This document shows, one piece after another, positions 3,972-64,000 of a stretch of 64,000 nucleotides of DNA (position 1 is the first letter of the stretch; every line of letters begins with the position of its first letter). A program made the translations under genes and the position numbers. Under the pieces are notes generated by a model. That model was not told the origin of the DNA. It saw nothing but the letters and a program-made list of their open reading frames with translations, and did no database searches. Source of the DNA: Haliotis cracherodii. Lineage: Eukaryota. The stretch spans positions 18,786,001-18,850,000 of the forward strand of contig NW_027266341.1 of NCBI RefSeq assembly GCF_022045235.1. The letters run 5' to 3'.

Positions 3972-4627
3972 GCATGCCTTTCATCTGCCTGATTAGTTAG
4001 TCGTCACTGACGCTGATCATAAGTGCATTCAGATCTTGCAATCTTCAGTGGCAAATGTTGGTGTGCTCTCTGATAATGACGCGCAAAGATTCTGTCACGA
4101 TACATCCAAACACAGGTTTTAAAGCACCCCGTGGACATCGTGCCTATACCGCTGTCCGTTCTTCATGAAATGTGGGTTACCCAATCATAGTGTCCAGGGA
4201 TATTTCAGTCTTTATTTGTGGATGAGTTTCTTTCATTAAAAAACATGATCCATGATCTTTGAGTAGTAGATATAGTTGGCCCTGTTTACGCCATGACGAT
4301 CGTAACTCGTACACTTTAACACTGAACGCCTTGTGGAAAAAACCCTAGTAAACAAATATACCATCGTCATTTATATTTATAGTGGTATGAGAATGAGGAT
4401 ATTCAAACTTGCTGTGTCTCTATGCTAATCAGAGGGTGTTTTATTCTATTTTAGGTGGCCAGATGATTGAGTGAGTGGGTTTCAGTTACATCACATCACT
4501 TCGTGTCGTCCTTTTAAGGGTGAAAAGTCAAACCTGACGCAGGTCTTAGACGTTGAAAACTGTGAAAATAAAAGCTACAAAACCATATCCTTAATCATAA
4601 GAAATAACGGCTTAAAACAGAGTCAGT

Positions 4628-4850
4628 TGTACGATTCCGACTATGTAACAAGGTGTGGGCAGCGGGTCATGTTTCCCCTTTCACGAACCCCTGGTGTCAT
4701 CAATGATCTTAAGTGATCCATCGATATAATTTTCACCGCTATTTTGTCTTTTTGCGCAATGGAATCTGTGTCGGCGTACAACCGAGACAGAATGCTGATT
4801 CCCGTTGTCGTTATATATTTATGAATCACTATCAAATAGCGATGAACCAG
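4628..4850. mobile_element. Rearranged Naiad-like PLE 3'-end fragments in both orientations
   Basis: gtacgattccgactat and tatgaatcactatcaaatag (as at 42601) flank an opposite-strand cgaacccctggtgtcatca segment that matches 49921-50060. Confidence 0.6.
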
Positions 4851-6100
4851 AAGATCACGACAAGGATCCCCCGAATACGGATATGGTGCTCACGGGTTTC
4901 GGGGCAAAACTAGGATTCGTATCCACGACCAAGGAGCCGCTTGTCTTTAGCCCACACTATCATCCGTGCCTTTTAGATGAGTGTTGACAAAAAACCTTGG
5001 ACGTTACGTTTTCAGTGTTTTGGTGTCCGTTTTAATCCTGGTAATGTTTTGATATCGTTTGCAATATAGTAGTCAAATCCAATTTTTAAATGTATACATT
5101 CCCATTTATGCGTAATATTTTTATTTTTTATATTTTTTATATGTTTTTTATGCGTAATATTGATGACGTTGCAATCCTACAAAACACGGAAGATGTTCCA
5201 ATCTAAAAAAACAATAAAAACAGTAAAAATGGCTCCATGTTACCAACCTGTCACGTGATCAATCAAGATGTACTACCAGGTTGGTTTGACATGAATTTTT
5301 CAAAACATTACGAGTATTTTCCGGTTGATTTTATTTAAAAGCTTTTTTTAGTGTTGTTTTCGAAGTTCTTTCAAGGAGAAATCTATAAACACCATGCTAA
5401 CCGCTTTTTTTCTGAATGTCTAAATATTTGATGAATATTTGCACCCATCCACGTTTGCGTGTATCACCGGTGGTTATGTGTAAGGGACTTACACTTACAT
5501 ACGGGCAATCAACATTGACTTGCTTCGTAGTCTACATTTAAGGAGCACTGTGTTTAATCTGGTATTAAACAAACCTTTAGACGGTGGCGTGGATTCAAGT
5601 ATGTAACGAGTCTGTGTAAATGGTCGCTCATATTAACGAGTAATAACAACAACAATCGCTTACCGAAATTAAAGCTTAATTCAGCGGTGTCGCGTTTTTA
5701 GAGATCCTTGGATAAAGTAGTCGAAGATGAATCGAAAGCTAAAAGGTTTTCGTGTTTCCTGATGCATTTTACACGTCCTGTTTGGCTTTTTTAGTCTGAT
5801 CCATTTGATAACGGTTACACTCGGTGTTTAATTCTTAACTGGCGAAGAGTCATCATTGAATGTCCTTTCGGTTGGTTGGTTAGGCAAGTAACAGAAATGC
5901 GCGGCATGCATTCTTGTGATGAATATGTGACGGTCGTGCACAGGTAGTCCCTTTCATTGAAGCAATGTATTTATTTATTGAAATTGGGCGATATGTAGTT
6001 ATTCTAGAGAAACCAAATTTGCCAATATGCATCCAAAATAATAGTACTATTTTCTTCTTGTGTGCTCAGTATGTGCACCATTAAGACAGGGGTATATACT

Positions 6101-6400
6101 GACCCAGATTTTCTAGTGGTAGAGCGTCCGCCCGGAGAGCGGAAGGTACGGGGTTCGATCCCCGGCCGCGTCATACCAAAATATGGTACTTGTTGTTACC
6201 CTGTCTGGCGCTCGGCATTAAGGGGCTAAACAAGGACTGGTCGGATCGGAGTCAGTATACTGTGTCTGAGTTGGGTATTCATGTTAAACTGCGGCATGGT
6301 ATCTCAGTGAGTTAGCACTATAAATCGGCATCAGTCCGGACTAGTAGCAGCCACACACACAGACACACACGTCCATGCACGTCGCTATATAAGTGCAATA
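6101..6400 (+). mobile_element. tRNA-derived SINE family B (Meta/Deu-like central domains)
   Basis: ctagtggtagagcg A-box, ggttcgatcccc B-box, gtcatacc...ggcattaagggg body shared with 19051 and 52248. Confidence 0.9.
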
Positions 6401-6416
6401 ATAATATAATCCTTAT

Positions 6417-6548
6417 ATGCCGAGCGCCAGACAGGGTAACAACAAGTACCATCTTTTAACGTCTTTTGGTATGACGCGGCCGGGGATCGAACCCCGTGCC
6501 TTCCGCTCTCCGGGCGGACGCTCTACCACTAGACCACGGAGGCGGTCT
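6417..6548 (-). mobile_element. Head-only family B SINE, inverted relative to the neighbouring copy
   Basis: Reverse complement of the first ~130 bp of family B. Confidence 0.88.
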
Positions 6549-7675
6549 CATATGACTATAGTTTATCTGTCATGCCATGACAAATTAACTGTAGTAATGT
6601 GAAAGAATCGGGTGGTTCTTTACTTGCGGTGCACTAGCTCCAGATTGCAACGGAGTCATGCATCTTGATCACGATAAAGCATTTATAGGTTTTTGATGCT
6701 GACAATGTAACAAAAACAATTAGACTTACTTTCTAGCACCTGAACAACGTTCTCGCTCCGACGAAGAAACTTCATACAGGCGAACTTGGGCGTTCTGGAA
6801 AACAAGATGTATTTAATTACAGTAGGGAATGTAGACTGTAGGAGCACACCCCCAGGCCAAGAAAATCAAATTACCTTATTTTTATTGAAATACCCGTGTA
6901 TATTGTCTAGTGAGGTGCGGTCATTTAATTTTTGTCTAACCAACAAGAAAAGGTTCTACTCATTGTATAAATAATATTGATTACATGTACTTCTAAATCT
7001 GTATGAATCCTGATATTTTGAATTTCCATAAATAAAATTTCGGAAACCACGTTCTTCAAAGAACTAAAAACAGTTGCTGTTAGTGTAGTCCCACCATGCA
7101 CGTTTGAAGGAAGACGTTGTACGCACTCAAACCTTTTCCAAAAATAGTTTTGGTGACGAACAAACGGTCTTTACGACCAGAGCAATGATATATGTATGTG
7201 TTGATAAACGACATGAAATTGATGGTACGAGTCATACAAATCAATCTCCGTTTAGGTCATTACATGCCAATGGTTGAGTACAAAATTGCCCCTAACTGTC
7301 ACAAGCGGGCTCTCAGTCTCTCCTAATATGACAACCTATCTTCCCTCGCTGACTGTAATACAATTAGACTCCACACAGTGCCACAGGGTGTATGGTGTAT
7401 CGTAAAGGTATAATTGCGGCTCATTCTCTGTTGACTCACTTGATTAGTACAAGAAGAGGGGGGGGGGGGCATATAATCTCCTTGTTGTACACCCTGCTGA
7501 GGAGTGAGTGAGGAGCGTTAACGAGGCTGATAGCAATCGTACAGCAATATCATGGGCGATTACCAAGACTTATTTTACTACCCTGAAGAGGATTCGAACC
7601 CTGATTTTGTCAATTTAATATCGAACGTAAATATATTTTCTGTTCATAACCTGAACTGGTTGGACTGTACAGTAA

Positions 7676-7678
<3 letters not shown>

Positions 7679-7756
<78 letters not shown>
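7679..7756. repeat. (TA)n microsatellite
   Basis: Pure TA run of about 78 bp. Confidence 0.98.
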
Positions 7757-7761
<5 letters not shown>

Positions 7762-7786
7762 TCTCTGCTAAAAACTGTTGTCCGTT

Positions 7787-10700
7787 GTACAATTCCGACT
7801 GTATCACAAGCAAGTGTTTATGAATCACTATCAATTAGGGATGATACCAGGTGTTCGAGAAAAGGTAAGCGTATATTGCCCCACCAGTGCCAGTGGCACC
7901 TGTCACAAATACATGCAAAGACAAGTCATTTATTCACCTAACAACACGTGGGAACCTATCGTACAGGTCAAAATAAGGAATTGCATCGGAACTCAGTTTT
8001 GTCACTGATGTGTCAAATTTGGAAATATCCTCCACATATCTACCTTAAACACTTTTTGAAAGCCTTACTGATGTTGTAACCCTGATCAAATAACGTTTGA
8101 GCAAATGCCTTTTGATGTCTTCGCAGAAAGATCGTGCTTGATTATACCTTAAAAGGTGTGAAGTGAAAACAGCCCAGGCTGGAGCTGCTGGAATATGGCT
8201 CGACATAAAGGGAAAGTTGACTGTTGGAATAATGAAGTCTTCCCGCTTATCTTACAGTCTTGTGGACATTTCATTGACTCCACACTCATCATACAGTCTT
8301 GTGGACACTTCATTGACTCCACACTTATCATACAGTCTTGTGGACACTCTATTGACTCCACACCTATCATACAGTCTTGTGGACACTTTATTGACTCCAC
8401 ACCTATCATACAGTCTTGTGGATACTTCATTGACTCCACACCTATCATACAGTCTTGTGAACACTTCATTGACTCCAAACCTATCATACAGTCTTGTTTA
8501 CACTTTATTGACTCCACACTTATCACACAGTCTTGTGGACACTTTATTGACTCCACACTTATCATACAGTCTTGTGGACACTTTATTGACTCCACACTTA
8601 TCACACAGTCTTGTGGACACTTTATTGACTCCACACTTATCACACAGTCTTGTGGACACTTTATTGACTCCACACTTATCACACAGTCTTGTGGACACTT
8701 TATTGACTCCACACTTATCACACAGTCTTGTGGACACTTTATTGACTCCACACTTATCATACAGTCTTGTGGACTCTTTATTGACTCCACACTTATCATA
8801 CAGTCTTGTGAACACTTTATTGACTCCACACTTATCATACAGTCTTGTGGACACTTTATTGACTCCACACTTATCATACAGTCTTGTGAACACTTTATTG
8901 ACTCCACACTTATCATACAGTCTTGTGGACACTTTATTGACTCCACACTTATCATACAGTCTTGTGGACACTTTATTGACTCCACACTTATCATACAGTC
9001 TTGTGAACACTTTATTGACTCCACACTTATCATACAGTCTTGTGGACACTTTATTGACTCCACACTTATCATACAGTCTTGTTTACACTTTATTGACTCC
9101 ACACTTATCATACAGTCTTGTGGACACTTTATTGACTCCACACTTATCATACAGTCTTGTGGACACTTTATTGACTCCACACTTATCATACAGTCTTGTG
9201 AACACTTTATTGACTCCACACTTATCATACAGTCTTGTGGACACTTTATTGACTCCACACTTATCATACAGTCTTGTGGACACTTTATTGACTCCACACT
9301 TATCATACAGTCTTGTGAACACTTTATTGACTCCACACTTATCATACAGTCTTGTGAACACTTTATTGACTCCACACTTATCATACAGTCTTGTTTACAC
9401 TTTATTGACTCCACACTTATCATACAGTCTTGTGGACACTTTATTGACTCCACACTTATCATACAGTCTTGTGAACACTTTATTGACTCCACACTTATCA
9501 TACAGTCTTGTGGACACTTTATTGACTCCACACTTATCATACAGTCTTGTGGACACTTCATTGACTCCACACTTATCATACAGTCTTGTGGACACTTTAT
9601 TGACTCCACACTTATCATACAGTCTTGTGGACACTTTATTGACTCCACACTTATCATACAGTCTTGTGAACACTTTATTGACTCCACACTTATCATACAG
9701 TCTTGTGAACACTTTATTGACTCCACACTTATCATACAGTCTTGTGGACACTTTATTGACTCCACACTTATCATACAGTCTTGTGAACACTTTATTGACT
9801 CCACACTTATCATACAGTCTTGTGGACACTTCATTGACTCCACACTTATCATACAGTCTTGTGGACACTTTATTGACTCCACACTTATCACACAGTCTTG
9901 TGGACACTTTATTCACTCCACACTTATCATACAGTCTTGTGGACTCTTTATTGCCACTCTGAATCTTTATGCATAGATTTAAATATGAAACAGATGAGGC
10001 TGTTTCAGTGGTCTCTTTTATTTCTAGTTCAGGTGAGTAAATCTAAGGAAAGTATTGCATTTTGACAATTATTAAACAATATCAGATCTACGATTTATCT
10101 GCAATTTAACCTTATTTACGCGCCGCTTTCGATGTTTTTCCTTTGTGTTAGGAAACAGATCAGCAAGGAGCGAAGCACAATTGGTGCCCATGGAGATGAT
10201 AACCTCTTGCCAAAATGTGCTAACCCTAACTGTCAGACATCTTGGATCAAATCATGTGTATATGAGGTCTTGCATTTCACATATTGTTTCCACAGTAACT
10301 TCAGATGACATATCCTTTCATTTCAGGCAAAGTTTAAAATAAAATGATTTGACATAATTAAACTTTGGTCTTTAGTGAGATGGCAAAAAATCAAAACATT
10401 TTTGAGAATCCAGACAAGATATTAATTCCACTTGTCTCGAATGCTTTCTGAGAGAGTACTTCCCTGATTGCTTTAAGGATTATGGTTAATCTTGGAAACG
10501 GGGATTTGGTGGTACATTTGCTGGACCCTGCGATATTTTTCTCCTTGTATGGCTATTTATGAAGCTTTGGGAGAAGAGGACATGTCTCCATGTCTTAAAT
10601 TCAATCCAAACGTTTATAGTATTGATGCGTAGTCTTTGCAGGATTCTTCCTAAATTTACATGCTGGCCTCCTATGAGGCAGTAATGACTATATGTCACTC

Positions 10701-11128: not shown

Positions 11129-11294
11129 GGGGCGGTCGGGTAGCCTAGTGGTTAAAGCGTTCGCTCGTCACGCCGAAGACACGGGTTCGATTCCCGACAT
11201 GGGTACAATGTGTGAAGCCCATTTGTGGTGTCCCCCGCCGTGATATTGCTGGAATATTGCTAAAAGCGGCGTAAAACCATACTCACTCACTCAC
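11129..11294 (+). mobile_element. SINE family A, full length
   Basis: Intact A/B boxes, (actc)n tail, TSD tataaaaa at 11120-11127 and 11295-11302. Confidence 0.93.
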
Positions 11295-13471: not shown

Positions 13472-13540
13472 CTGGAGCAAGAAGTCAACTTGTATATAAC
13501 TGATCATAGCTTGTTGTGTAAGAATACTCAGTCCATATGT

Positions 13541-13786
13541 TTGTTTGTTTGTTTGTTTTTTAACGCCGCACTCAGCAATATTCCAGCTATATGACGGTGG
13601 TCTGGAATTAATCGAGTCTGGACCAGACAATCCAGTGATTTACATCATGAGCATCAATCCACGCAATTGAGATACGGTGACATGCATCAACCGAATCAGC
13701 GAGCCTGACCACCCGATCCCGTTAGTTGCTTCTTACGGCAAGCATGGGTTGCTGCAGACCTATTCCACCCCGGATCTTCACGGTTC
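13541..13786 (-). mobile_element. SINE-like family D (no tRNA head)
   Basis: (aaac)n tail, 5' end ga(a/c)ccgtgaagatccgggg; 14-bp TSD ctcagt(c/a)catatgt at 13527-13540 and 13787-13800. Confidence 0.9.
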
Positions 13787-14504
13787 CTCAGTACATATGT
13801 CACATTATAAATATCCTTACCCGGAACCATTTTGATAAAGTCAGTCTATTGTTGTTGCAGTTGAATATGAGCCAGGAATACACTCGCCATTCTGAACGTG
13901 CATTTCAACAAGTAGAATTGACGCAACTATAGGTCATTATGCAAAATTATATAGAAAACATATATCCACATGGTCTATTTCGGAGAAATCACTCGAATCT
14001 GTTGATTCTCCATTACGTATTGTATCACATGAAAAGGAAAACAAAATTTAGAATGAGAAATTTATGAACCCATTATCACACTAGGTGTATGCGAATGAAT
14101 GCAATGTTAGTGTGGTGGCACCAGGTGTTCGCGAAACAATGTAAAGTAGTGATGACATCAGGAACACGGAAAATTGTAGTTACACAAGTGTTTCAGTATT
14201 TTTCAACACCAGTGCGGAAAAACAATATCTATTGATAATTTAAACACTTGAAAACCGTACATATAAGAATGTATGAATATTATAAACGTTATCGAAACGT
14301 TACAAGGCTGAAAACACTGCAAACATAAGGCCAAAACATAGTTTTAATACCCGCATCAAATACATCATCGTCGAATAACCATTTTTGATTGTTTCATTTC
14401 CAACCACCATCAATGGGTGTATACCTTCATACGTTCCTTTGCGCGTGAGTTTATACTGACAGAATTCATAAACAAAGTGGTAATCATTGATTGTTTCAAT
14501 GAGA

Positions 14505-16269: not shown

Positions 16270-16445
16270 TTCCGACTATATCATGACCATGTGTTTATGA
16301 ATCACTATCAAATAGTGATGACACCAGGTGTTCGCGAATAAGTGACCGCACCCTGCCCCACCGGTATTGCATGATGTGGAGTATGCTAACGGTTTGTATA
16401 GGAAACTGGTACCATGTCAGTGTAAAAATCTTCACGTGTGTTTCT
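16270..16445 (-). mobile_element. Solo Naiad-like PLE 3' end (E1)
   Basis: ttccgactat...atcactatcaaatagtgatgacaccaggtgttcgcgaa, homologous to 7787-7910. Confidence 0.8.
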
Positions 16446-16447
16446 GA

Positions 16448-16720
16448 TGGTTGGTTGGTTGGTTTGTTGTTTAACGCCGCACTCAGCAATATAACAGCTA
16501 TATGACGGCGGTCTGTAAATAATCAAGTCTGGACCAGACAATCCAGTGATTAATATCATGAACATCGATCCACGCAACTGGGATACGATGACATGAATCA
16601 ACCAAGTCAGCGAGCCTGACCACCTGATCCCGTTAGTCGCCTTTTACGACAAGCATAGTCACCTTTTACAGCAAGCATGGGTTGCTGAAGACCTATTCTA
16701 CCCCGGAATCTTCACGGGTC
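16448..16720 (-). mobile_element. Family D, full length
   Basis: Matches 13541 and 28254; ends cttcacgggtc on the plus strand. Confidence 0.9.
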
Positions 16721-19990: not shown

Positions 19991-20037
19991 CCAGTTCCTG
20001 CATTTACACGAACAACTTCAAATGACCGGCAAGTGTT

Positions 20038-20145
20038 GGTGACGGGTGCCATCGGTGGGGCCCGATACGATCTCCGTTTCGCGAACACCTTATACCACTA
20101 CTTGATAGCGATACGTAAACATATGATATAGTCGGAATCGTACAA
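20038..20145 (+). mobile_element. Solo PLE 3' end (E1)
   Basis: gtgacgggtgccatcggtgggg...ttcgcgaacacct...atagtcggaatcgtaca. Confidence 0.75.
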
Positions 20146-23384: not shown

Positions 23385-23520
23385 TCGGGGATCTGCCAAA
23401 ACATATTCCTTTGGCCGTAAAAGGAAAAATAGTGGTGAAAAATATTTGAATGGGTCACGGACACCAGGTGTTCATGAAAAGGGAAGGCATGTCCTGCCCT
23501 AGCGGTAGCAGCCGCCACTT
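23385..23520 (-). mobile_element. PLE 3'-end subfamily E2
   Basis: gacaccaggtgttc...cctgccctagcggtagcagccgccac; flank matches 49985-50050 inverted. Confidence 0.65.
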
Positions 23521-24979
23521 TCACAATTTGCATAAAGGAAAGCGTTTGTTGTAGTTTATAACGAGTTTATTTCAAGCGAAATATGAGCGCAGTAATTCTG
23601 CATCAGCGGTACCAGATATTACTGGTTATCGCCATGCAAGAGATGCATGACAGTTTATCGCAATTGGGAAGTCAAATCTGCAGTTTTAAGCTCGAGAGAT
23701 CTTTATATCACCAAAGATTACGTACATAGGTATATTCGACTGGCTTGTGCATTGTGTTATATACTAGTATATATACAGCGAAACCTGGTTCCAGAGTCCA
23801 GAGAGAATCAATAACATACTGTGAAAAGTTAATGAAAAACAGATATTTCGTATCACTGCCATGCCATATTAGTAACTATAGTCATAAAAAAACATGGGGT
23901 GTTCTTTAACTTTTTTAAAAGTATTATATAATATATATATATATGATATATAATAGGTCATAGTGCAAACTAGGATTCTTCCAGGTTTCTAAAGTTACAC
24001 CTTCTAAAACGATGTCCAGTGAAACCTTGTTAATCCGGACACCCTGTTCCGGACTATAACTGCTGGGAATACTTATATGTAATAGAACTGACATTCACAC
24101 GAACGTCAATCTGGGCATTTGTTAGTCCTGACTATTTCAGTTTAAGTCCCGTGTCAGGATTGCATCGAGTCAGTGAGGTTCGAGATAATTAGCTTTCGTT
24201 GAAGATAATAAAAATATCTCCAATGATAGATAAAATGAATCTACCCTATAGATCAAACTACACTTCATTATTATCTGTGAAGTCTTTTTATGCTTTACCA
24301 AGACTTTCCTTGAGGCGTTTCATTCACTCACACAAAACATTGAGCTCAATCAAGAAACATAAATATGTCCCTGTTTATTTCTCATAAATATATAACAAAC
24401 TAATATAACATTCTACAATGTAAACATAACAAAAAAAATTGCTGAGTGCCATCTTTACAATAACATACAAGCATGGTTACTTTCTCACCTGTGTGATTTC
24501 TATTGAACTTCGATTGCAGGTAAATTGTTTTCATTTTCAGTGTATGGAGCTAATTATTGCCTATTTCAGCTGATGGACGTAGGTTTTGTTTCCTAGCGAG
24601 TGAGGCAAGGTTTTCACGCTCGGTCAACTCATGGACAGAACCACAGAAGGTCAGCCATTGTGGTCGTCGTTGTCGACGTGTTTGTCAAACACAACATTAT
24701 TAGTGGAAATGTGAAGCATGAACGGTGAAGCAGCCGCGGTATGGATGTGGTTGTGCTTCACCGAATGACACGTCCAGGATTAAAGCAAACTTTATGTTCG
24801 AATTGATTTCTGATTATTTGGCTGACTTGGTTATGAACACAAAGACTCCAAAGATACCTCAAAAGGAAGGTACATGAAGGGGCAATGTTCACCGGGAGAG
24901 ACCAGCATGTTACTAAAGAGGCAGAAAATTAAAGAACGTCAAGGGCGTGAGCTGTTCATCCTTGAACCTCTGTCACTAT

Positions 24980-28253: not shown

Positions 28254-28491
28254 GGATTGGTTTGGTTTGGTTTGGTTTTTTTTGGTTTTTGGTTTAACGC
28301 CGGTCTGTAAAATAATCGAGTCTGGACAAGACAATCCAGTGGTTGAGATCATGAGCATCGATCCACGCAATTGGGATACGATGACATGTATCAACCAAGC
28401 CAGCGAGCCTGACCACCCGATCCCGTTAGTCGCCTTTTACGGCAAGCATGGGTTGCTGAAGACCTATTCTACCCCGGAATCTTCACGGGTC
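28254..28491 (-). mobile_element. Family D inserted in the first unit of a minisatellite
   Basis: TSD gtaaggggat at 28244-28253 and 28492-28501. Confidence 0.88.
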
Positions 28492-31944: not shown

Positions 31945-32119
31945 GACTCACTGACTGACTGACTGAGTATGGTTTTACGCCGCTTTTAGCAATATTCCAG
32001 CAATATCACAGCGGGGGAAACCAGGAATGGGCTTCACACATTGTACCCATTCGGGAATCGAACCCGGGTCTTCGGCGTGACGAGCCAACGCTTTAACCAC
32101 TAGGCTACCCGACCGCCCC
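31945..32119 (-). mobile_element. SINE family A, full length
   Basis: Reverse complement of the 53461 copy. Confidence 0.92.
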
Positions 32120-32126
32120 TATACAT

Positions 32127-32395
32127 ATACATATGCTTATGATGTTGTCGGAATTGGAATCGGAATCAGCCTCTGCATTTAGCAGATATTTCTTATGATT
32201 ATGGAATGTTTTGGTCGCTTTTATGTATGTTTCAATGGCAATACGACATACATTATATTCAAAAGTGTGTGTATATATATATTCCGACAACATCATAAGC
32301 ATATGTATCAAAAAGCGATGACACCAGGTGTTGGTGAAGAGGTGAGCGTAGCCTTCCCCGTCGTACAAACCACACAGCCGCGTGTCATTATATAA
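32127..32395. mobile_element. Tail-to-tail PLE 3' ends
   Basis: Perfect 28-bp inverted repeat at 32127-32154 and 32281-32308, the latter continuing into gatgacaccaggtgtt. Confidence 0.7.
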
Positions 32396-33332: not shown

Positions 33333-33587
33333 ACCCTTGAACATCCGGGGTAGAATAGGTCTTCAGCAACCCATGTTTGATTTAAAAGGTGACTATGCAT
33401 GTCGTAAGAGGCGACTAACGGGTCAGGCTCACTGATTCGGTTGATGCATGTCATCGTATCCCAATTGTGAGAATTGATGTTCATGATGCCAATCACTGGA
33501 TTGTCTGGTCCAGGCTCGATTATTTACAGACCGCCGCCATATAGCTGGGACATTGCTGAATGCGGCGTTAAACATCAAACAAACAAA
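33333..33587 (+). mobile_element. Family D
   Basis: atccggggtagaataggtcttcagcaacccatg...gcggcgttaaacatcaaacaaac. Confidence 0.88.
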
Positions 33588-33599
33588 CCGGCAGCCCCA

Positions 33600-42600: not shown

Positions 42601-42825
42601 TGTACGATTCCGACTATGTCATGAGCATGTGTTATGAATCACTATCAAATAGTGATGATACCATATGTTCGCGAAGGCGTGAGCGTATCCTGCCCCATCG
42701 GTGGCACGTGTCACAAATACATGCAAAGGCACGCCAAATGTTCGCCTGAAAACCACGGAAACATACGGTACAAGTCAAAATAGGGAATTGCATCGGACAT
42801 TATTTTGTCACTGATGCGTCAAAGT
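42601..42825 (-). mobile_element. Solo PLE 3' end (E1)
   Basis: Colinear with 7787-8015 over about 220 bp. Confidence 0.85.
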
Positions 42826-49210: not shown

Positions 49211-49920
49211 TTGCATCCGAAGTACACATGATAAAGTGACATGCAATGTTTAAACATTTATCAATGCACAAACCTACATATAGAGTACGAGTTTGTCGTA
49301 AAACATTCAGTCTTAATGAACGCGATATTTGTGAAACACAAGTTTAAAAATACATCTGTGGCAAACATGATATCAACGAAATAATGTGATTACCCTTGAA
49401 ACAGTTCCAGCGCATACTGATGCATCTTTCACAATGTCAAAGTTTTACGTCAGTTTAATGGGCCCATGTAGAATACAGTCTTCCAACTAGGGATTCAGCC
49501 TTATGAATTATACACATACATTATATATTTATCTGTACTGACGTTTGATGATGGTTTGTCCTGGAGGTTTCCTGACTTGAAGAACAATGCGATGATAGCG
49601 CTAACGTCACAACGACCTCAAAGTGTTTAGGCAGTAAAAAGCATTAAACTGTCTTGAGGAGAACCTTTAACATTTTGTAACATGCAGGTTGTGATCATGC
49701 TGAATTTCTGTGCAGATAACCAAGATACACTTTGTAATTACTTATTCATCCAATAGCCTGTCTGTCGCGACGTTCAGATATACTTAACTGTCTTTACAAG
49801 AGCACACGACACTGGTAGGTAATATAACTCAAGATAATATTTCATTTTTCTTGTTTACAGGTCGTCCCATGGTAGGCGTCAGACAACAAACACTGACCTC
49901 CTAATGCAAATGGTGTGAGT

Positions 49921-50060
49921 AGTGGCGGGTGCTGCCGGTAGAACAGGGTATGCGAACACCTGGTGTCATCACTGATATTCAGTAATGCATTCATATAATT
50001 TTCACCACTATTGTGTCTTTTTATGCCAAAAATGAATCTGTTTCGGCAGATATTTGAGGC
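49921..50060 (+). mobile_element. PLE 3'-end subfamily E2
   Basis: gtggcgggtgctgccggt...gcgaacacctggtgtcatcac. Confidence 0.68.
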
Positions 50061-50214
50061 TGATTATTTATATATTTATATTTATATAAAACCAAGGGTA
50101 TTGCCCCATTTTGGTCATGTTCCATGGGTGAGTGAGTAATGTGCAGATTAACGCCACATTCAAGCTTTTGAGTAATGTGCAGATTAACGCCACATTCAAG
50201 CTATTGAGTAAAGC

Positions 50215-53460: not shown

Positions 53461-53630
53461 GGGGCGGTCGTGTAGCCTAGTGGTTAAAGCGTTCGCTCGT
53501 CACGCCGAAGACCCGGGTTCGATTCCCAACATGGGTACAATGTGTGAAGCCCATTTCTGGTGTCCCCCGCCGTGATATTGCTGGAATATTGCTAAAAGCG
53601 GCGTAAAACCAAACTCACTCACTCACTCAC
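53461..53630 (+). mobile_element. SINE family A, young full-length copy
   Basis: Perfect 12-bp TSD tcagatggtacc at 53449-53460 and 53631-53642. Confidence 0.95.
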
Positions 53631-63360: not shown

Positions 63361-63599
63361 GCGGAAGTAAATTTTGTCAAAATGGACGAAATCATAACGA
63401 AACGTTCCCGTTATTTGCTTTAATAATTAACATAAATTGACGCAAATAATGTCAACATGGCTAAAATGATCACAATAAATTACGTAAATGTGTCCCACGA
63501 CGTCAAGACGTTGAGGTACGTTTCCGTAGTACATATACTCATGTACATAAAAAAACGTCTCGAATATCCGAAACACAGATTCCATTGGAAGAAAACAGC

Positions 63600-63690
63600 A
63601 AGACAGTGGTGAAAACCGTATGAAAAACAGTAGTGACACCAGGTGTTCGCGCAAAGGTTAAACATGTCCTCCCCCAGGAAACACGTGAAA
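63600..63690 (-). mobile_element. PLE 3'-end fragment (E2-like)
   Basis: agtgacaccaggtgttcgcgcaaaggttaaacatgtcctccccc. Confidence 0.55.
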
Positions 63691-64000
63691 CCACTTCACC
63701 TTCAAGGAACCAATTAAAAAACAAACATCTATAGCATTAACGTATATTGCATTCACTGTTCGTATGAATTTTAAAAAAATCCCAATGTAAACGTTGTTTT
63801 TATTTTGTGTAGCGTAATTGTATACACGTATTTATGCTGTGATCTGCAGGGTATCGACACGGCGGTAACTAGATTAGGTAACTTCTCGTTCATCAAATAA
63901 CAGAGAAAAAGCCCTACTGCCGACACTCGCCCTATAGTATTACTTCGACCTGTGTTGCCGAGGTTAACATATTTCTTCATGGCGTATAAGAACGACGTGC

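What the first reader, a model, noticed from the sequence alone, without database searches (positions are those of the whole stretch)
7787..7915. Conserved structured RNA at the 3' end of Naiad-like PLEs: candidate uncharacterised ribozyme or RT-recognition element
Seen: about 9-10 dispersed copies (4655, 7850, 14115, 16300, 20038, 23460, 32320, 42660, 49921, 63630) in two subfamilies with different flanks share an element-sense core, roughly GUGAC-GGGUG-CCACCGGUGG-GGCAGGAUACGCUCACC..UUCGCGAA-CACCU-GGU-GUCAU-CACUAUUUGAUAGUG. GUGAC/GUCAU and GGGUG/CACCU can close a multibranch fold holding two palindromes, followed by a separate hairpin. Established: canonical PLE pseudo-LTRs carry hammerheads, whereas N-terminal-EN (Naiad-type) PLEs are reported to lack them. 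Inference: this motif may replace the hammerhead. A G-U closed P1 followed by GG and a P4-like hairpin is loosely HDV-like, but the L3 region does not fit the canonical fold.
Basis: partly seen in the sequence, partly recalled or inferred. Interest (0 to 1): 0.75.

Follow-up and report, generated by a model that had tools for sequence, protein, structure and literature searches.

The report
Conserved RNA fold ending Naiad retrotransposons
A stretch of about 105 bases that starts at the stop codon of a very abundant Penelope-like (Naiad-type) retrotransposon keeps the same folded RNA shape in two diverged families, so it is probably a signal the element needs to be copied; nothing shows yet that it is a ribozyme.

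Summary
The two variants of the core 15-mer occur 4,801 and 3,749 times in the 1.18-Gb genome, against 3 and 0 for the controls.

The motif starts at the stop codon of a decayed reverse-transcriptase gene. Of 10 long homologues, 7 carry an N-terminal GIY-YIG domain, which is the Naiad type.

Two families share the motif:
- Family A is autonomous.
- Family B is about 200 bases long and has no gene.

Between their majority sequences, 9 base pairs changed on both sides and stayed paired, and none of 34 pairs broke. Neither null reached this in 1,000 trials.

A 14-pair closing helix contains the stop codon and encloses two arms. A likely loop-to-junction pseudoknot also covaries.

No Rfam family matches: not hammerhead, HDV-like or SECIS. 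Self-cleavage could not be tested, because the RNA runs are kept only as contigs.

Best reading: a cis-acting RNA recognised by the element's reverse transcriptase.

Limits: one genome, and in effect one deep branch. The scan notes I could see hold no earlier report of it.

The parts
7810..7916 (-). Whole structured element in the copy of the finding (about 107 nt; this copy carries a 6-nt insertion and several decay mutations)
   Evidence: R1 match at 7808-7915, 75 bits, E 4.2e-17. Sequence read. The helices were placed by alignment to the family model.
7903..7916 (-). P1 5' strand (14 nt): the last codons of the RT gene plus its TGA stop (7903-7905)
   Evidence: The gene frame ends here in other copies (for example the L035 ORF). 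P1 is predicted by RNAalifold on 20 copies and on the family majority sequences. By my own count on the window letters, 12 of 14 pairs are intact in this copy.
7897..7902 (-). P1b 5' strand (CAGGTG here, CGGGTG in the family); pairs with 7848-7853
   Evidence: There are no two-sided changes: the pairs are invariant or vary on one side only.
7886..7896 (-). Internal-loop strand: 5' half of the CCACCGGTGG palindrome, with a 6-nt insertion in this copy
   Evidence: Its second base changes C>T in family B together with G>A in the 3' half, so the palindrome is kept (haplotypes C-G-C in 33 copies, T-A-T in 13).
7864..7885 (-). P2 arm: 5' strand 7880-7885, loop 7870-7879, 3' strand 7864-7869
   Evidence: One pair switches G-C to A-U between the families (GC 39, AU 17, GU 7; AU 8, GC 8).
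7871..7875 (-). Pseudoknot 5' strand, in the P2 loop (GATAC in the family, TATAC here)
   Evidence: RNAalifold chose this helix on its own on 20 copies. The pair is U-A in family A and C-G in family B. Genome haplotypes are TA 957, CG 529, TG 217 and CA 52.
7854..7863 (-). Unpaired junction strand holding the TTCGCGAA palindrome (TTCTCGAA in this copy)
   Evidence: It has the same sequence in family A's majority sequence and in the first, 15-copy majority sequence of family B; the 26-copy majority has T for one C (TTCGTGAA). The commonest form is seen in 34 of 86 copies.
7843..7853 (-). P1b 3' strand (7848-7853, CACCTG) followed by the pseudoknot 3' strand (7843-7847, GTATC); part of the core 15-mer
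7824..7842 (-). P3 hairpin (8-pair stem and 3-nt loop in the family; weakened in this copy)
   Evidence: It is predicted in every fold. Two adjacent pairs are compensated between the families (AU/GC and UA/AU).
7810..7823 (-). P1 3' strand (14 nt)
   Evidence: Five P1 pairs are compensated between families A and B.
7761..7809 (-). 3' tail of the element. This copy lacks about the last 40 nt seen in many family A copies
   Evidence: A tail of 30-40 bp that is present or absent is described for Naiads (PMC8557442).
7680..7760 (.). (TG)n(TA)n microsatellite that abuts the 3' end of the copy
   Evidence: A (TA)n target bias of Naiads is reported in PMC8557442.
7917..8245 (-). Decayed C-terminal coding remnant of the reverse transcriptase, with stops and frameshifts
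   Evidence: Translations. Homology to the RT C-terminus of other copies is shown.
42623..42723 (-). Family A copy of the structured element
   Evidence: R1 80.4 bits, E 1.8e-18
16285..16376 (-). Family A copy, 5'-truncated inside the element; ends in a (CA)-rich repeat
   Evidence: R1 46.1 bits, E 1.4e-09
20030..20128 (+). Family A copy (decayed)
   Evidence: R1 44.1 bits, E 4.5e-09
32291..32382 (-). Family A copy (partial)
   Evidence: R1 22.6 bits, E 0.0017
49874..50068 (+). Family B element: short, no gene, with a 13-nt deletion inside the motif
   Evidence: R1 match at 49910-50002, 50.5 bits
23352..23533 (-). Family B element with the P3 hairpin deleted
   Evidence: R1 match at 23438-23527, 56 bits
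4640..4818 (+). Family B element, 5'-truncated, inserted in a TA-rich site inside an inverted family A copy (A pieces at 4609-4652 and 4813-4885, minus strand)
   Evidence: One contig of run X15 joins 4641 to 4818 without the insert.
63582..63706 (-). Family B-like copy (decayed)
   Evidence: R1 match at 63602-63695, 30.4 bits, E 1.6e-05

Best explanation
The motif is a conserved, folded sense-strand RNA of about 105 nt. It begins at the stop codon of an N-terminal-endonuclease (Naiad-type) Penelope-like retrotransposon and ends about 85-100 nt before the element's 3' terminus.

The fold, as shown:
- A 14-pair closing helix (P1). Its 5' strand is the last codons plus the TGA stop.
- P1 stacks on a 6-pair helix (P1b), which leads through a conserved asymmetric internal loop to a short hairpin (P2).
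- An 8-pair hairpin (P3) forms the second arm.
- The 5-nt junction between the arms can pair with the P2 loop as a pseudoknot.

The function is inferred. The fold is most likely the cis-acting handle by which the element's reverse transcriptase-endonuclease picks its own RNA for target-primed reverse transcription. A stop codon inside P1 would let a newly made protein bind the RNA it was translated from. A short gene-less derivative (family B) keeps only this structure plus a tail and borrows the machinery.
For: Context:
- The RT C-terminus lies directly upstream, and the frame stops inside the motif.
- Homologues are 783-996 aa with the match at their C-terminal end, and 7 of 10 have an N-terminal GIY-YIG domain, 4 of them above Pfam's cut-off.
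- Copies are 5'-truncated and end at TA-rich repeats.

Structure:
- Between the majority sequences of families A and B, 36 of 111 aligned columns differ. The RNAalifold consensus has 34 pairs: 9 compensated on both sides, 3 changed on one side, 0 incompatible.
- 0 of 1,000 trials reach 9 compensated pairs or the observed energy. This holds whether the substitutions are placed at random or kept in place with random new bases.
- Core only: 4 compensated pairs of 24, p 0.001.
- Structure-free count of compensated pairs lying in helices of 4 or more: 7 observed, p 0.0038; only 4 on the antisense strand.
- RNAalifold on 20 real copies independently returns P1, P3 and the pseudoknot helix.
- Pair counts on the 20 copies: 91.3% of cells paired against 32-46% when partners are slid; 17 pairs changed on both sides against 10.5 in shuffles (0 of 500).
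- Pair counts on 86 copies: 83.0% against 31-45%.
- Near-consensus family A copies fold at z -2.0 to -2.35 on the sense strand; the one A copy and one B copy folded antisense give z -1.1 and -0.8.

Function:
- Family B has a common 5' end about 47 nt upstream of the motif. None of 39 scored non-self matches reaches further, and 10 start within 5 nt of each other.
- Family B has thousands of copies and inserts into TA sites.
- The inner core is the best-kept part shared with family A: 60 of 73 columns.
- Craig et al. note non-autonomous Chlamys elements that resemble autonomous ones at their 3' ends (PMC8557442).
Against: - All compensations lie on one deep split (A against B). They are few independent events seen in many copies, and shuffle tests overstate significance for related sequences.
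- In the pair-count calls the helices were derived from the same sequences.
- RNAalifold on all 86 decayed copies predicts no structure at all.
- On that 86-copy set, two measures that count pairs or types are not significant (68 of 500 and 216 of 500).
- P1b never covaries.
- A family B sublineage carries an uncompensated change in P2 (seen by eye).
- Family B copies and the window copy fold no better than shuffles, or barely so (z -0.39 to -1.9).
- The 20-copy set was picked by eye as least decayed.
- 60 of the sampled copies were chosen by exact match to the 15-mer, so its conservation in the alignments is by construction.
- No other species could be examined.
- Binding by the reverse transcriptase is inferred only. 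A and B tails beyond the motif are also distantly alike, so the tail could be the recognised part.
- An N-terminal GIY-YIG domain was not found on a copy in this genome. Only the end of that domain is matched in one copy.
Confidence: 0.5

Rival explanations
1. It is a self-cleaving ribozyme of an undescribed class. It would do for Naiads what hammerheads are thought to do in other Penelope-like elements: cut tandem or read-through transcripts to unit length.
For: - It sits where other PLE clades carry hammerheads, and Naiads lack them (PMC8557442).
- The fold is compact: a three-way junction, a likely pseudoknot, and fully conserved unpaired strands. That is typical of small ribozymes.
- Family B starts shortly upstream of the fold, as expected if cleavage set a 5' end.
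Against: - No match to any Rfam ribozyme family, even at E up to 5-10, on the window copy and on 14 other copies.
- Neither majority sequence holds the CUGANGA or GAAA core words.
- The HDV topology does not fit, because no P2 partner exists.
- Family B's 5' end is about 30 nt upstream of P1, not at a helix edge.
- There is no evidence of cleavage. The RNA runs on offer are contigs and show no molecule ends.
- New ribozyme classes are rare.
Confidence: 0.1
2. It is an RNA-RNA dimerisation or template-switch element. The two palindromes pair between two element RNAs and help the reverse transcriptase jump templates. That would give the partial tandem copies (pseudo-LTRs) typical of these elements.
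For: - A 10-nt palindrome and an 8-nt palindrome lie in strands that the monomer fold leaves partly or wholly unpaired.
- The 10-nt palindrome changes symmetrically between families and stays a palindrome: C-G-C in 33 copies, T-A-T in 13.
- The 8-nt palindrome reads the same in family A's majority sequence and in the first, 15-copy majority sequence of family B; the 26-copy family B majority differs at one base, a C>T in a CpG.
- Tandem arrays holding the motif exist in the genome.
Against: - The G>A change in the palindrome is already explained by the P2 pair with C>U. Only one extra change needs this idea.
- No test of dimer formation was possible.
- The tandem arrays may be ordinary satellites.
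Confidence: 0.1
3. It is a DNA-level signal in the pseudo-LTR: a promoter, a transcription-factor site or a terminator. The palindromes would be protein-binding sites, and the RNA fold would be incidental.
For: - In Penelope and in Chlamys-3_cRei the pseudo-LTR holds the transcription start and promoter (PMC8557442).
- Loop-less palindromes are typical of sites bound by dimeric proteins.
- The core 15-mer is very uniform.
Against: - Nine two-sided compensations preserve pairing rather than sequence.
- Several pairs are G-U on the sense strand and would be C-A on the other strand. The antisense strand scores worse.
- The outer P1 strands are only 43-57% identical between the families, yet all 14 pairs are kept.
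Confidence: 0.1
4. It acts on translation or on the fate of the mRNA: stop-codon read-through, a SECIS-like recoding signal as in selenoprotein Naiads, or an RNA stability or export element.
For: - The TGA stop lies inside P1.
- Selenoprotein Naiads of clams carry SECIS elements 1-21 nt after their stops (PMC8557442).
- In family A a different frame stays open through the motif.
Against: - No SECIS family of Rfam matches.
- Neither majority sequence has an AUGA word inside the fold. I saw no AUGA/GA quartet by inspection.
- Family B has no gene, yet it keeps the fold.
- Family B has a 1-nt insertion and a stop in the alternative frame, so the motif is not coding.
Confidence: 0.07
5. It has no function of its own. 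The similarity would be shared ancestry of two related families, and the compensations chance.
For: - Only one deep branch is sampled.
- RNAalifold finds nothing on the 86 decayed copies.
- Single copies are only modestly more stable than shuffles.
Against: - 0 of 1,000 trials in two null models reach the observed compensations or energy.
- None of 34 pairs is broken, although 36 of 111 columns differ.
- Slid-partner controls fall from 91% to 32-46% paired.
Confidence: 0.05

Closest known systems
Hammerhead ribozymes in the pseudo-LTRs of canonical Penelope-like elements
   Same: Both are small structured RNAs near the 3' end of a PLE, present in every copy, built around a three-way junction, and of unsettled function.
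   Different: No hammerhead core words are present and no Rfam hammerhead match was found. The junction strands are 0, 5 and 0 nt long, not the hammerhead core. Cleavage has not been shown.
3' UTR structures that reverse transcriptases of non-LTR retrotransposons bind (R2 3' UTR; stem-loops of 'stringent' LINEs shared with their SINEs). Recalled knowledge, not looked up here.
   Same: Both are structured RNAs downstream of the gene. The fold is conserved more than the sequence in the outer helix. Both are shared between an autonomous element and a short gene-less partner.
   Different: This is a different retroelement class, with a GIY-YIG endonuclease and a telomerase-like reverse transcriptase. 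The fold starts at the stop codon and lies about 85-100 nt from the 3' end, not at it. Binding is untested.
SECIS elements in the 3' UTR of selenoprotein-encoding Naiads of clams and spiders (PMC8557442)
   Same: Same element clade and same place, immediately after the stop codon. Both are structured RNAs of similar size.
   Different: No SECIS match in Rfam and no kink-turn quartet. The gene-less family B keeps the fold.
HDV-like ribozymes of non-LTR retrotransposons
   Same: A pseudoknotted small RNA in a retrotransposon.
   Different: The topology does not fit: there is no P2 partner and a 10-nt linker sits where P3 should adjoin P1. No Rfam match was found.
Pseudoknot and three-way-junction domains of telomerase RNA that bind TERT. 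Recalled knowledge; PLE reverse transcriptases are the closest relatives of TERT (PMC8557442 abstract).
   Same: A three-way junction plus a pseudoknot in an RNA that a TERT-related reverse transcriptase may have to grasp.
   Different: There is no sequence or demonstrated structural homology. The resemblance is in parts list only.

Membership tests
Naiad-type (N-terminal endonuclease) Penelope-like element | Reverse transcriptase of the PLE type at the C-terminus of the single gene | tested here: met
   A 291-aa open frame of one copy gives 13,973 hits at E <= 0.001. Long hits (783-1113 aa) match at their C-terminal end. RVT_1 matches are weak: 5 of 10 homologues, all below the Pfam cut-off.
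Naiad-type (N-terminal endonuclease) Penelope-like element | GIY-YIG endonuclease N-terminal to the reverse transcriptase | tested here: inconclusive
   This is met in homologues: 7 of 10 have GIY-YIG at residues 53-203, and 4 are above Pfam's cut-off. In this genome only the end of the domain is matched, upstream of the RT in copy L051. A whole-genome search with P0081 scored 49 of 7,451 candidates, and none covers residues 86-169.
Naiad-type (N-terminal endonuclease) Penelope-like element | CxC linker motif and insertion-in-fingers domain | not tested
Naiad-type (N-terminal endonuclease) Penelope-like element | Insertion bias for (TA)n; optional 30-40 bp tail; inverted or tandem partial copies | tested here: met
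   (TA)n lies at 7680-7757 next to the copy. Family B is inserted at a TA site inside an inverted family A copy. Copies occur with and without the last 40 nt or so.
Naiad-type (N-terminal endonuclease) Penelope-like element | No canonical hammerhead | tested here: met
   No Rfam hammerhead match at the gathering threshold on the window, at E up to 10 on 7700-8050 or at E up to 5 on 14 other copies.
Hammerhead ribozyme | CUGANGA and GAAA core words around three helices | tested here: not met
   Neither word occurs in the 125-nt majority sequences of families A and B. Rfam gave no match.
HDV-like ribozyme | Nested double pseudoknot: P1, P1.1, P2, P3, P4 | tested here: not met
   No Rfam HDV-type match. 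By inspection, nothing complementary to the would-be P2 strand lies downstream of the hairpin.
SECIS element | AUGA/GA kink-turn quartet between two helices, with unpaired A residues in the apical loop | tested here: not met
   No Rfam SECIS match. The only ATGA word lies outside the fold, in family A. SECISearch3 was not available.
Retrotransposon 3' cis-element recognised by its own reverse transcriptase | Structure conserved through compensatory change | tested here: met
   9 compensated pairs of 34, 0 broken; 0 of 1,000 trials in two nulls reach this. The result rests on one deep branch.
Retrotransposon 3' cis-element recognised by its own reverse transcriptase | Shared with a non-autonomous partner element | tested here: met
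   Family B: none of 39 scored non-self matches extends beyond about 47 nt upstream of the motif, and 10 start within 5 nt of each other. Only 40 of 2,016 candidates were scored.
Retrotransposon 3' cis-element recognised by its own reverse transcriptase | Binding by the reverse transcriptase and requirement for mobilisation | not testable with these tools
   This needs biochemistry or a retrotransposition assay.

The most novel reading that the evidence does not exclude
The fold is a new class of self-cleaving ribozyme. It would have taken the place of the hammerhead in the most successful clade of Penelope-like elements, cutting tandem or read-through transcripts to unit length.
Probability: 0.08. 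Interest if true: 0.9.

Novelty: new variant of a known kind. Interest (0 to 1): 0.55.

Why it matters
How Penelope-like elements choose and copy their RNA is unknown. Naiads are the clade that reaches tens of thousands of copies in invertebrates, and they were set apart by lacking the hammerhead that all other clades carry. This finding offers a defined, testable RNA module of about 105 nt. It sits at the stop codon, is supported by compensatory change and is kept by a gene-less hitch-hiker.

It gives experimenters a concrete object for binding, cleavage and mobilisation assays. It gives annotators a marker for Naiad 3' ends and their short derivatives. PLE reverse transcriptases are the nearest relatives of telomerase. 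An RNA handle made of a three-way junction and a pseudoknot would therefore also bear on how telomerase came to hold its RNA.

Tried and rejected
Other species. A scan of metagenome contigs with the 15-mer returned 119 stretches. nhmmer with the motif profile found nothing better than E 0.018, so these are chance hits. No eukaryotic relatives are on hand. A full-text search for the 15-mer on both strands found 0 papers.

Literature:
- Searches for a described Naiad or PLE 3' structure gave only Craig et al. 2021 and reviews.
- I read passages of PMC8557442 and passages of the 2026 retrozyme preprint.
- I read passages of the mollusc SINE paper PMC4758252, which holds no text match to the core.
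- Figures and supplements are not available. I could not check Supplementary file S1 of Craig et al. (consensus sequences, 'HHR_core' marks), its fig. S3 (SECIS), or the SINE domain alignments against this motif.

Reads. The RNA runs offered are Logan contigs only, and their 'RNA' label is a guess. Molecule ends, and so cleavage, cannot be read from them. The call showed only that contigs of organism A and of a more distant organism D carry family-consensus letters over the motif. Depth there is about ten times that of the coding remnant upstream.

Coding. A frame other than the RT frame is open through the motif in family A. Family B has a 1-nt insertion and a stop in it, so this reading is rejected.

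Lower-identity RT copies. I fetched the 3' ends of 18 copies with lower RT identity, hoping for further families. Those that held the motif were all decayed family A.

RNAalifold on all 86 copies gave no structure.

Rows dropped:
- Of 118 distinct 15-mer-anchored copies, 84 scored 45 or more against a family majority sequence and 34 were dropped. 83 full-length copies plus 3 window copies made alignment A1.
- Alignment A2 is 20 of these, chosen by eye.


Full report
WHAT IS THERE

The motif of the finding lies on the minus strand. The core 15-mer with up to 2 mismatches occurs 11 times in the window against 0.27 expected, and 0 of 100 shuffles reach 11.

Covariance model R1 was built from 20 copies taken from other parts of the genome. 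It finds 9 window copies at E <= 0.0017. Position 14115 is only a one-mismatch 15-mer.

The window belongs to a 1.18-Gb assembly. In that assembly the two variants of the 15-mer occur 4,801 and 3,749 times, against 3 and 0 for the reversed-pattern controls.

WHAT ELEMENT IT BELONGS TO

I aligned 30 genomic copies with flanks. Similarity runs upstream with falling coverage, the signature of 5'-truncated retro-copies, and the upstream part is coding. It is the C-terminus of a reverse transcriptase, and its frame ends in a TGA that lies inside the motif.

A protein search of the genome gave 15,733 candidates. The 150 scored copies all have open frames of 291 aa or less and scattered stops, so the family is old and decayed.

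The 291-aa frame of one copy was searched against 1.84 billion representative proteins. It gave 13,973 hits at E <= 0.001, and the long hits match at their C-terminal end. Of 10 long hits scanned with Pfam, 7 have a GIY-YIG domain near the N-terminus, and 4 of those are above the curated cut-off. That is the permuted architecture of Naiad and Chlamys elements.

On a copy in this genome I could show only the end of that domain upstream of the RT. This defining feature is therefore met in relatives and inconclusive here.

The (TA)n tract next to the copy fits the published description of Naiads, as do the optional last 40 nt of the tail and an inverted partial copy at 4609-4885 (PMC8557442, passages).

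TWO FAMILIES

Family A is the gene-bearing element.

Family B shares the motif but has a different tail. In a genome search with a family B copy plus 420 nt of upstream flank, none of the 39 scored non-self matches (of 2,016 candidates) extends beyond about 47 nt upstream of the motif. Ten start within 5 nt of each other. Many others start at a point where the query copy has a deletion, which probably just breaks the alignment.

Family B is thus a short element of about 200 nt with no gene. It is homologous to the last 35 nt or so of the A gene, the motif and a diverged tail. It inserts into TA-rich sites.

Between the majority sequences of 57 A copies and 26 B copies:
- The inner core is identical at 60 of 73 columns.
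- The two flanking strands are identical at 8 of 14 and 6 of 14 columns.

THE FOLD

Single copies gave little at first. The window copy and a second copy fold no better than shuffles, and only the terminal hairpin is robust. Comparing the families changed that.

Core only: RNAalifold on the two majority sequences gives 24 pairs, with 4 compensated on both sides, 1 changed on one side and none incompatible. In 2,000 trials that place the same number and kind of substitutions at random, 0.1% reach 4 compensations and 0.15% reach the energy.

RNAalifold on 20 of the less decayed real copies, with no input from me, then extended the closing helix into the 'different flanks'. The 14 nt before and including the stop codon pair with the 14 nt after the hairpin.

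With those flanks included, the two-family consensus has 34 pairs. Nine are compensated, 3 are changed on one side and 0 are incompatible, although 36 of 111 columns differ. None of 1,000 trials reaches this. That holds when substitutions are placed at random, and also when they keep their places but receive random new bases.

A count that assumes no structure tallies two-sided changes lying in any helix of at least 4 pairs valid in both families. It gives 7 against a null with p 0.0038, and only 4 on the antisense strand.

The model:
- P1: 14 pairs. Its 5' strand is the last codons plus the stop.
- P1b: 6 pairs.
- P2: 6 pairs.
- P3: an 8-pair hairpin.
- A 5-nt junction that can pair with the P2 loop.

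The loop-junction helix was chosen by RNAalifold on its own. It carries one compensated pair, U-A in family A and C-G in family B.

Genome-wide, the four haplotypes of that pair count as follows:

| Haplotype | Count |
|---|---|
| TA | 957 |
| CG | 529 |
| TG | 217 |
| CA | 52 |

The wobble-compatible intermediate is four times as common as the incompatible one. That is what RNA pairing predicts, but a single amplified sublineage could also produce it.

Pair counts on a named structure:

| Measure | 20 copies | 86 copies |
|---|---|---|
| Cells paired | 91.3% | 83.0% |
| Cells paired, partners slid | 32-46% | 31-45% |
| Pairs changed on both sides | 17 against 10.5 in shuffles (0 of 500) | 15 against 12.2 (68 of 500) |
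| Cells changed on both sides | 84 against 36 (0 of 500) | 105 against 44 (0 of 500) |

Near-consensus family A copies fold at z -2.0 to -2.35 on the sense strand; one A copy and one B copy folded on the antisense strand give z -1.1 and -0.8.

WHAT SPEAKS AGAINST

- All compensations separate A from B. They are a handful of events on one deep branch, repeated in many copies, and the shuffle controls are known to overstate in that case.
- The structure tested was derived from the same sequences.
- RNAalifold on all 86 decayed copies returns no structure.
- In one search the pairs-with-two-sided-change measure (68 of 500) and the pair-type measure (216 of 500) are not significant. In one search the pair-type measure is not significant either (69 of 500).
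- P1b never covaries.
- A family B sublineage has an uncompensated change in P2 (seen by eye).
- Family B copies and the window copy are weakly stable or not stable (z -0.39 to -1.9).
- I picked the 20-copy set by eye.
- 60 sampled copies were chosen by exact match to the 15-mer, so its invariance in the alignments means nothing.
- No other species could be examined.

WHAT IT IS NOT

- No Rfam family matches: at gathering scores on the whole window, at E up to 10 on the copy, or at E up to 5 on 14 other copies. That covers hammerhead, HDV-like, twister, pistol, hatchet and SECIS models.
- The hammerhead core words are absent.
- The HDV topology fails for lack of a P2 partner.
- The motif is not coding, because family B breaks the only open alternative frame.

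HOW IT MOST LIKELY WORKS

Shown:
- A sense-strand fold is conserved by compensation.
- It sits at the stop codon of a Naiad-type element.
- A short gene-less derivative with the same insertion habit keeps it.

Inferred:
- The fold is the handle by which the reverse transcriptase-endonuclease recognises RNA for target-primed reverse transcription.
- The stop codon inside P1 would couple the end of translation to refolding and to capture of the same RNA.
- Family B would be mobilised in trans.

Non-autonomous Chlamys elements that resemble autonomous ones at their 3' ends are on record (PMC8557442).

I put about 0.8 on 'a selected RNA structure' and about 0.5 on the whole statement including the function. 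The rivals are a new ribozyme (0.1), a dimerisation or template-switch element built on the palindromes (0.1), a DNA signal (0.1), a translational or stability role (0.07) and no function (0.05).

READS

The runs found are DNA runs of the same organism and of close relatives, plus small runs guessed to be RNA. All of the latter are kept as contigs. Laid on 4400-8245, their contigs cover the motif bin at depth 1,743-3,425, against 172-480 just upstream. They carry the family's majority letters where the window copy has decayed, and this includes a run of a more distant organism D. Contigs cannot show molecule ends, so the cleavage question stays open.

NOVELTY

My searches found no description of a conserved structured element at Naiad 3' ends. 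Supplements and figures that might hold one were not available. The kind of thing, a retrotransposon 3' RNA structure used in cis, is known from other element classes. For Penelope-like elements it would be new. The scan's earlier notes that I could see do not hold it.

Noticed in passing
window 8246-9953: A minisatellite with a 78-nt period lies directly upstream (in element sense) of the decayed RT remnant of the finding's copy. Long open frames run through it into the RT remnant.
   Followed up: partly
window 11134-11205(+), 53466-53537(+), 32051-32107(-), and about 10 further copies of the same roughly 165-nt repeat: A tRNA-derived SINE family. These are the only Rfam hits of the window (tRNA, 30.7-33.2 bits), and the copies are 74-97% alike.
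   Followed up: no
window 6112-6550: Another repeat, partly arranged as an inverted pair (6112-6223 against 6411-6533). It draws by far the greatest depth of the putative RNA contigs, up to about 120,000 summed word depth, with many opposite-strand joints.
   Followed up: no
G000:C1:16861762-16862479; C1:12240504-12248332; C12:24048601-24137845; C33:335487-337817: Tandem arrays that contain the motif or its 15-mer. Periods are about 37 nt, about 868 nt, about 1.2-2.4 kb and 1,076 nt. These are satellites or tandem PLE arrays built from the element's 3' part. The scan's note s1-835431 describes a 2.4-kb satellite from a Penelope RT motif elsewhere in this genome.
   Followed up: no
L054 (about 6420-6700, minus strand) and L069: In two independent places a 5'-truncated family B copy directly follows the 3' end of another abundant SINE-like repeat. 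The same repeat occurs at window 13539-13786, 16450-16720, 28297-28491 and 33333-33589. This may be a chimeric SINE with a family B tail, or nested insertion.
   Followed up: partly
L051:7505-7846 (minus strand): A second open frame of 114 aa looks like a GIY-YIG domain and is preceded by a Cys-rich stretch. It lies 6.5 kb upstream of the family A RT remnant and matches the N-terminal GIY-YIG of two homologues weakly (E 0.018-0.045). It is probably the 5' part of another PLE copy.
   Followed up: partly
family A copies, for example L024, L030 and L020: A frame other than the RT frame stays open for about 35 codons through the whole structured element in family A and ends just after it. Family B breaks it, so I read it as a by-product of the conserved RNA.
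   Followed up: partly
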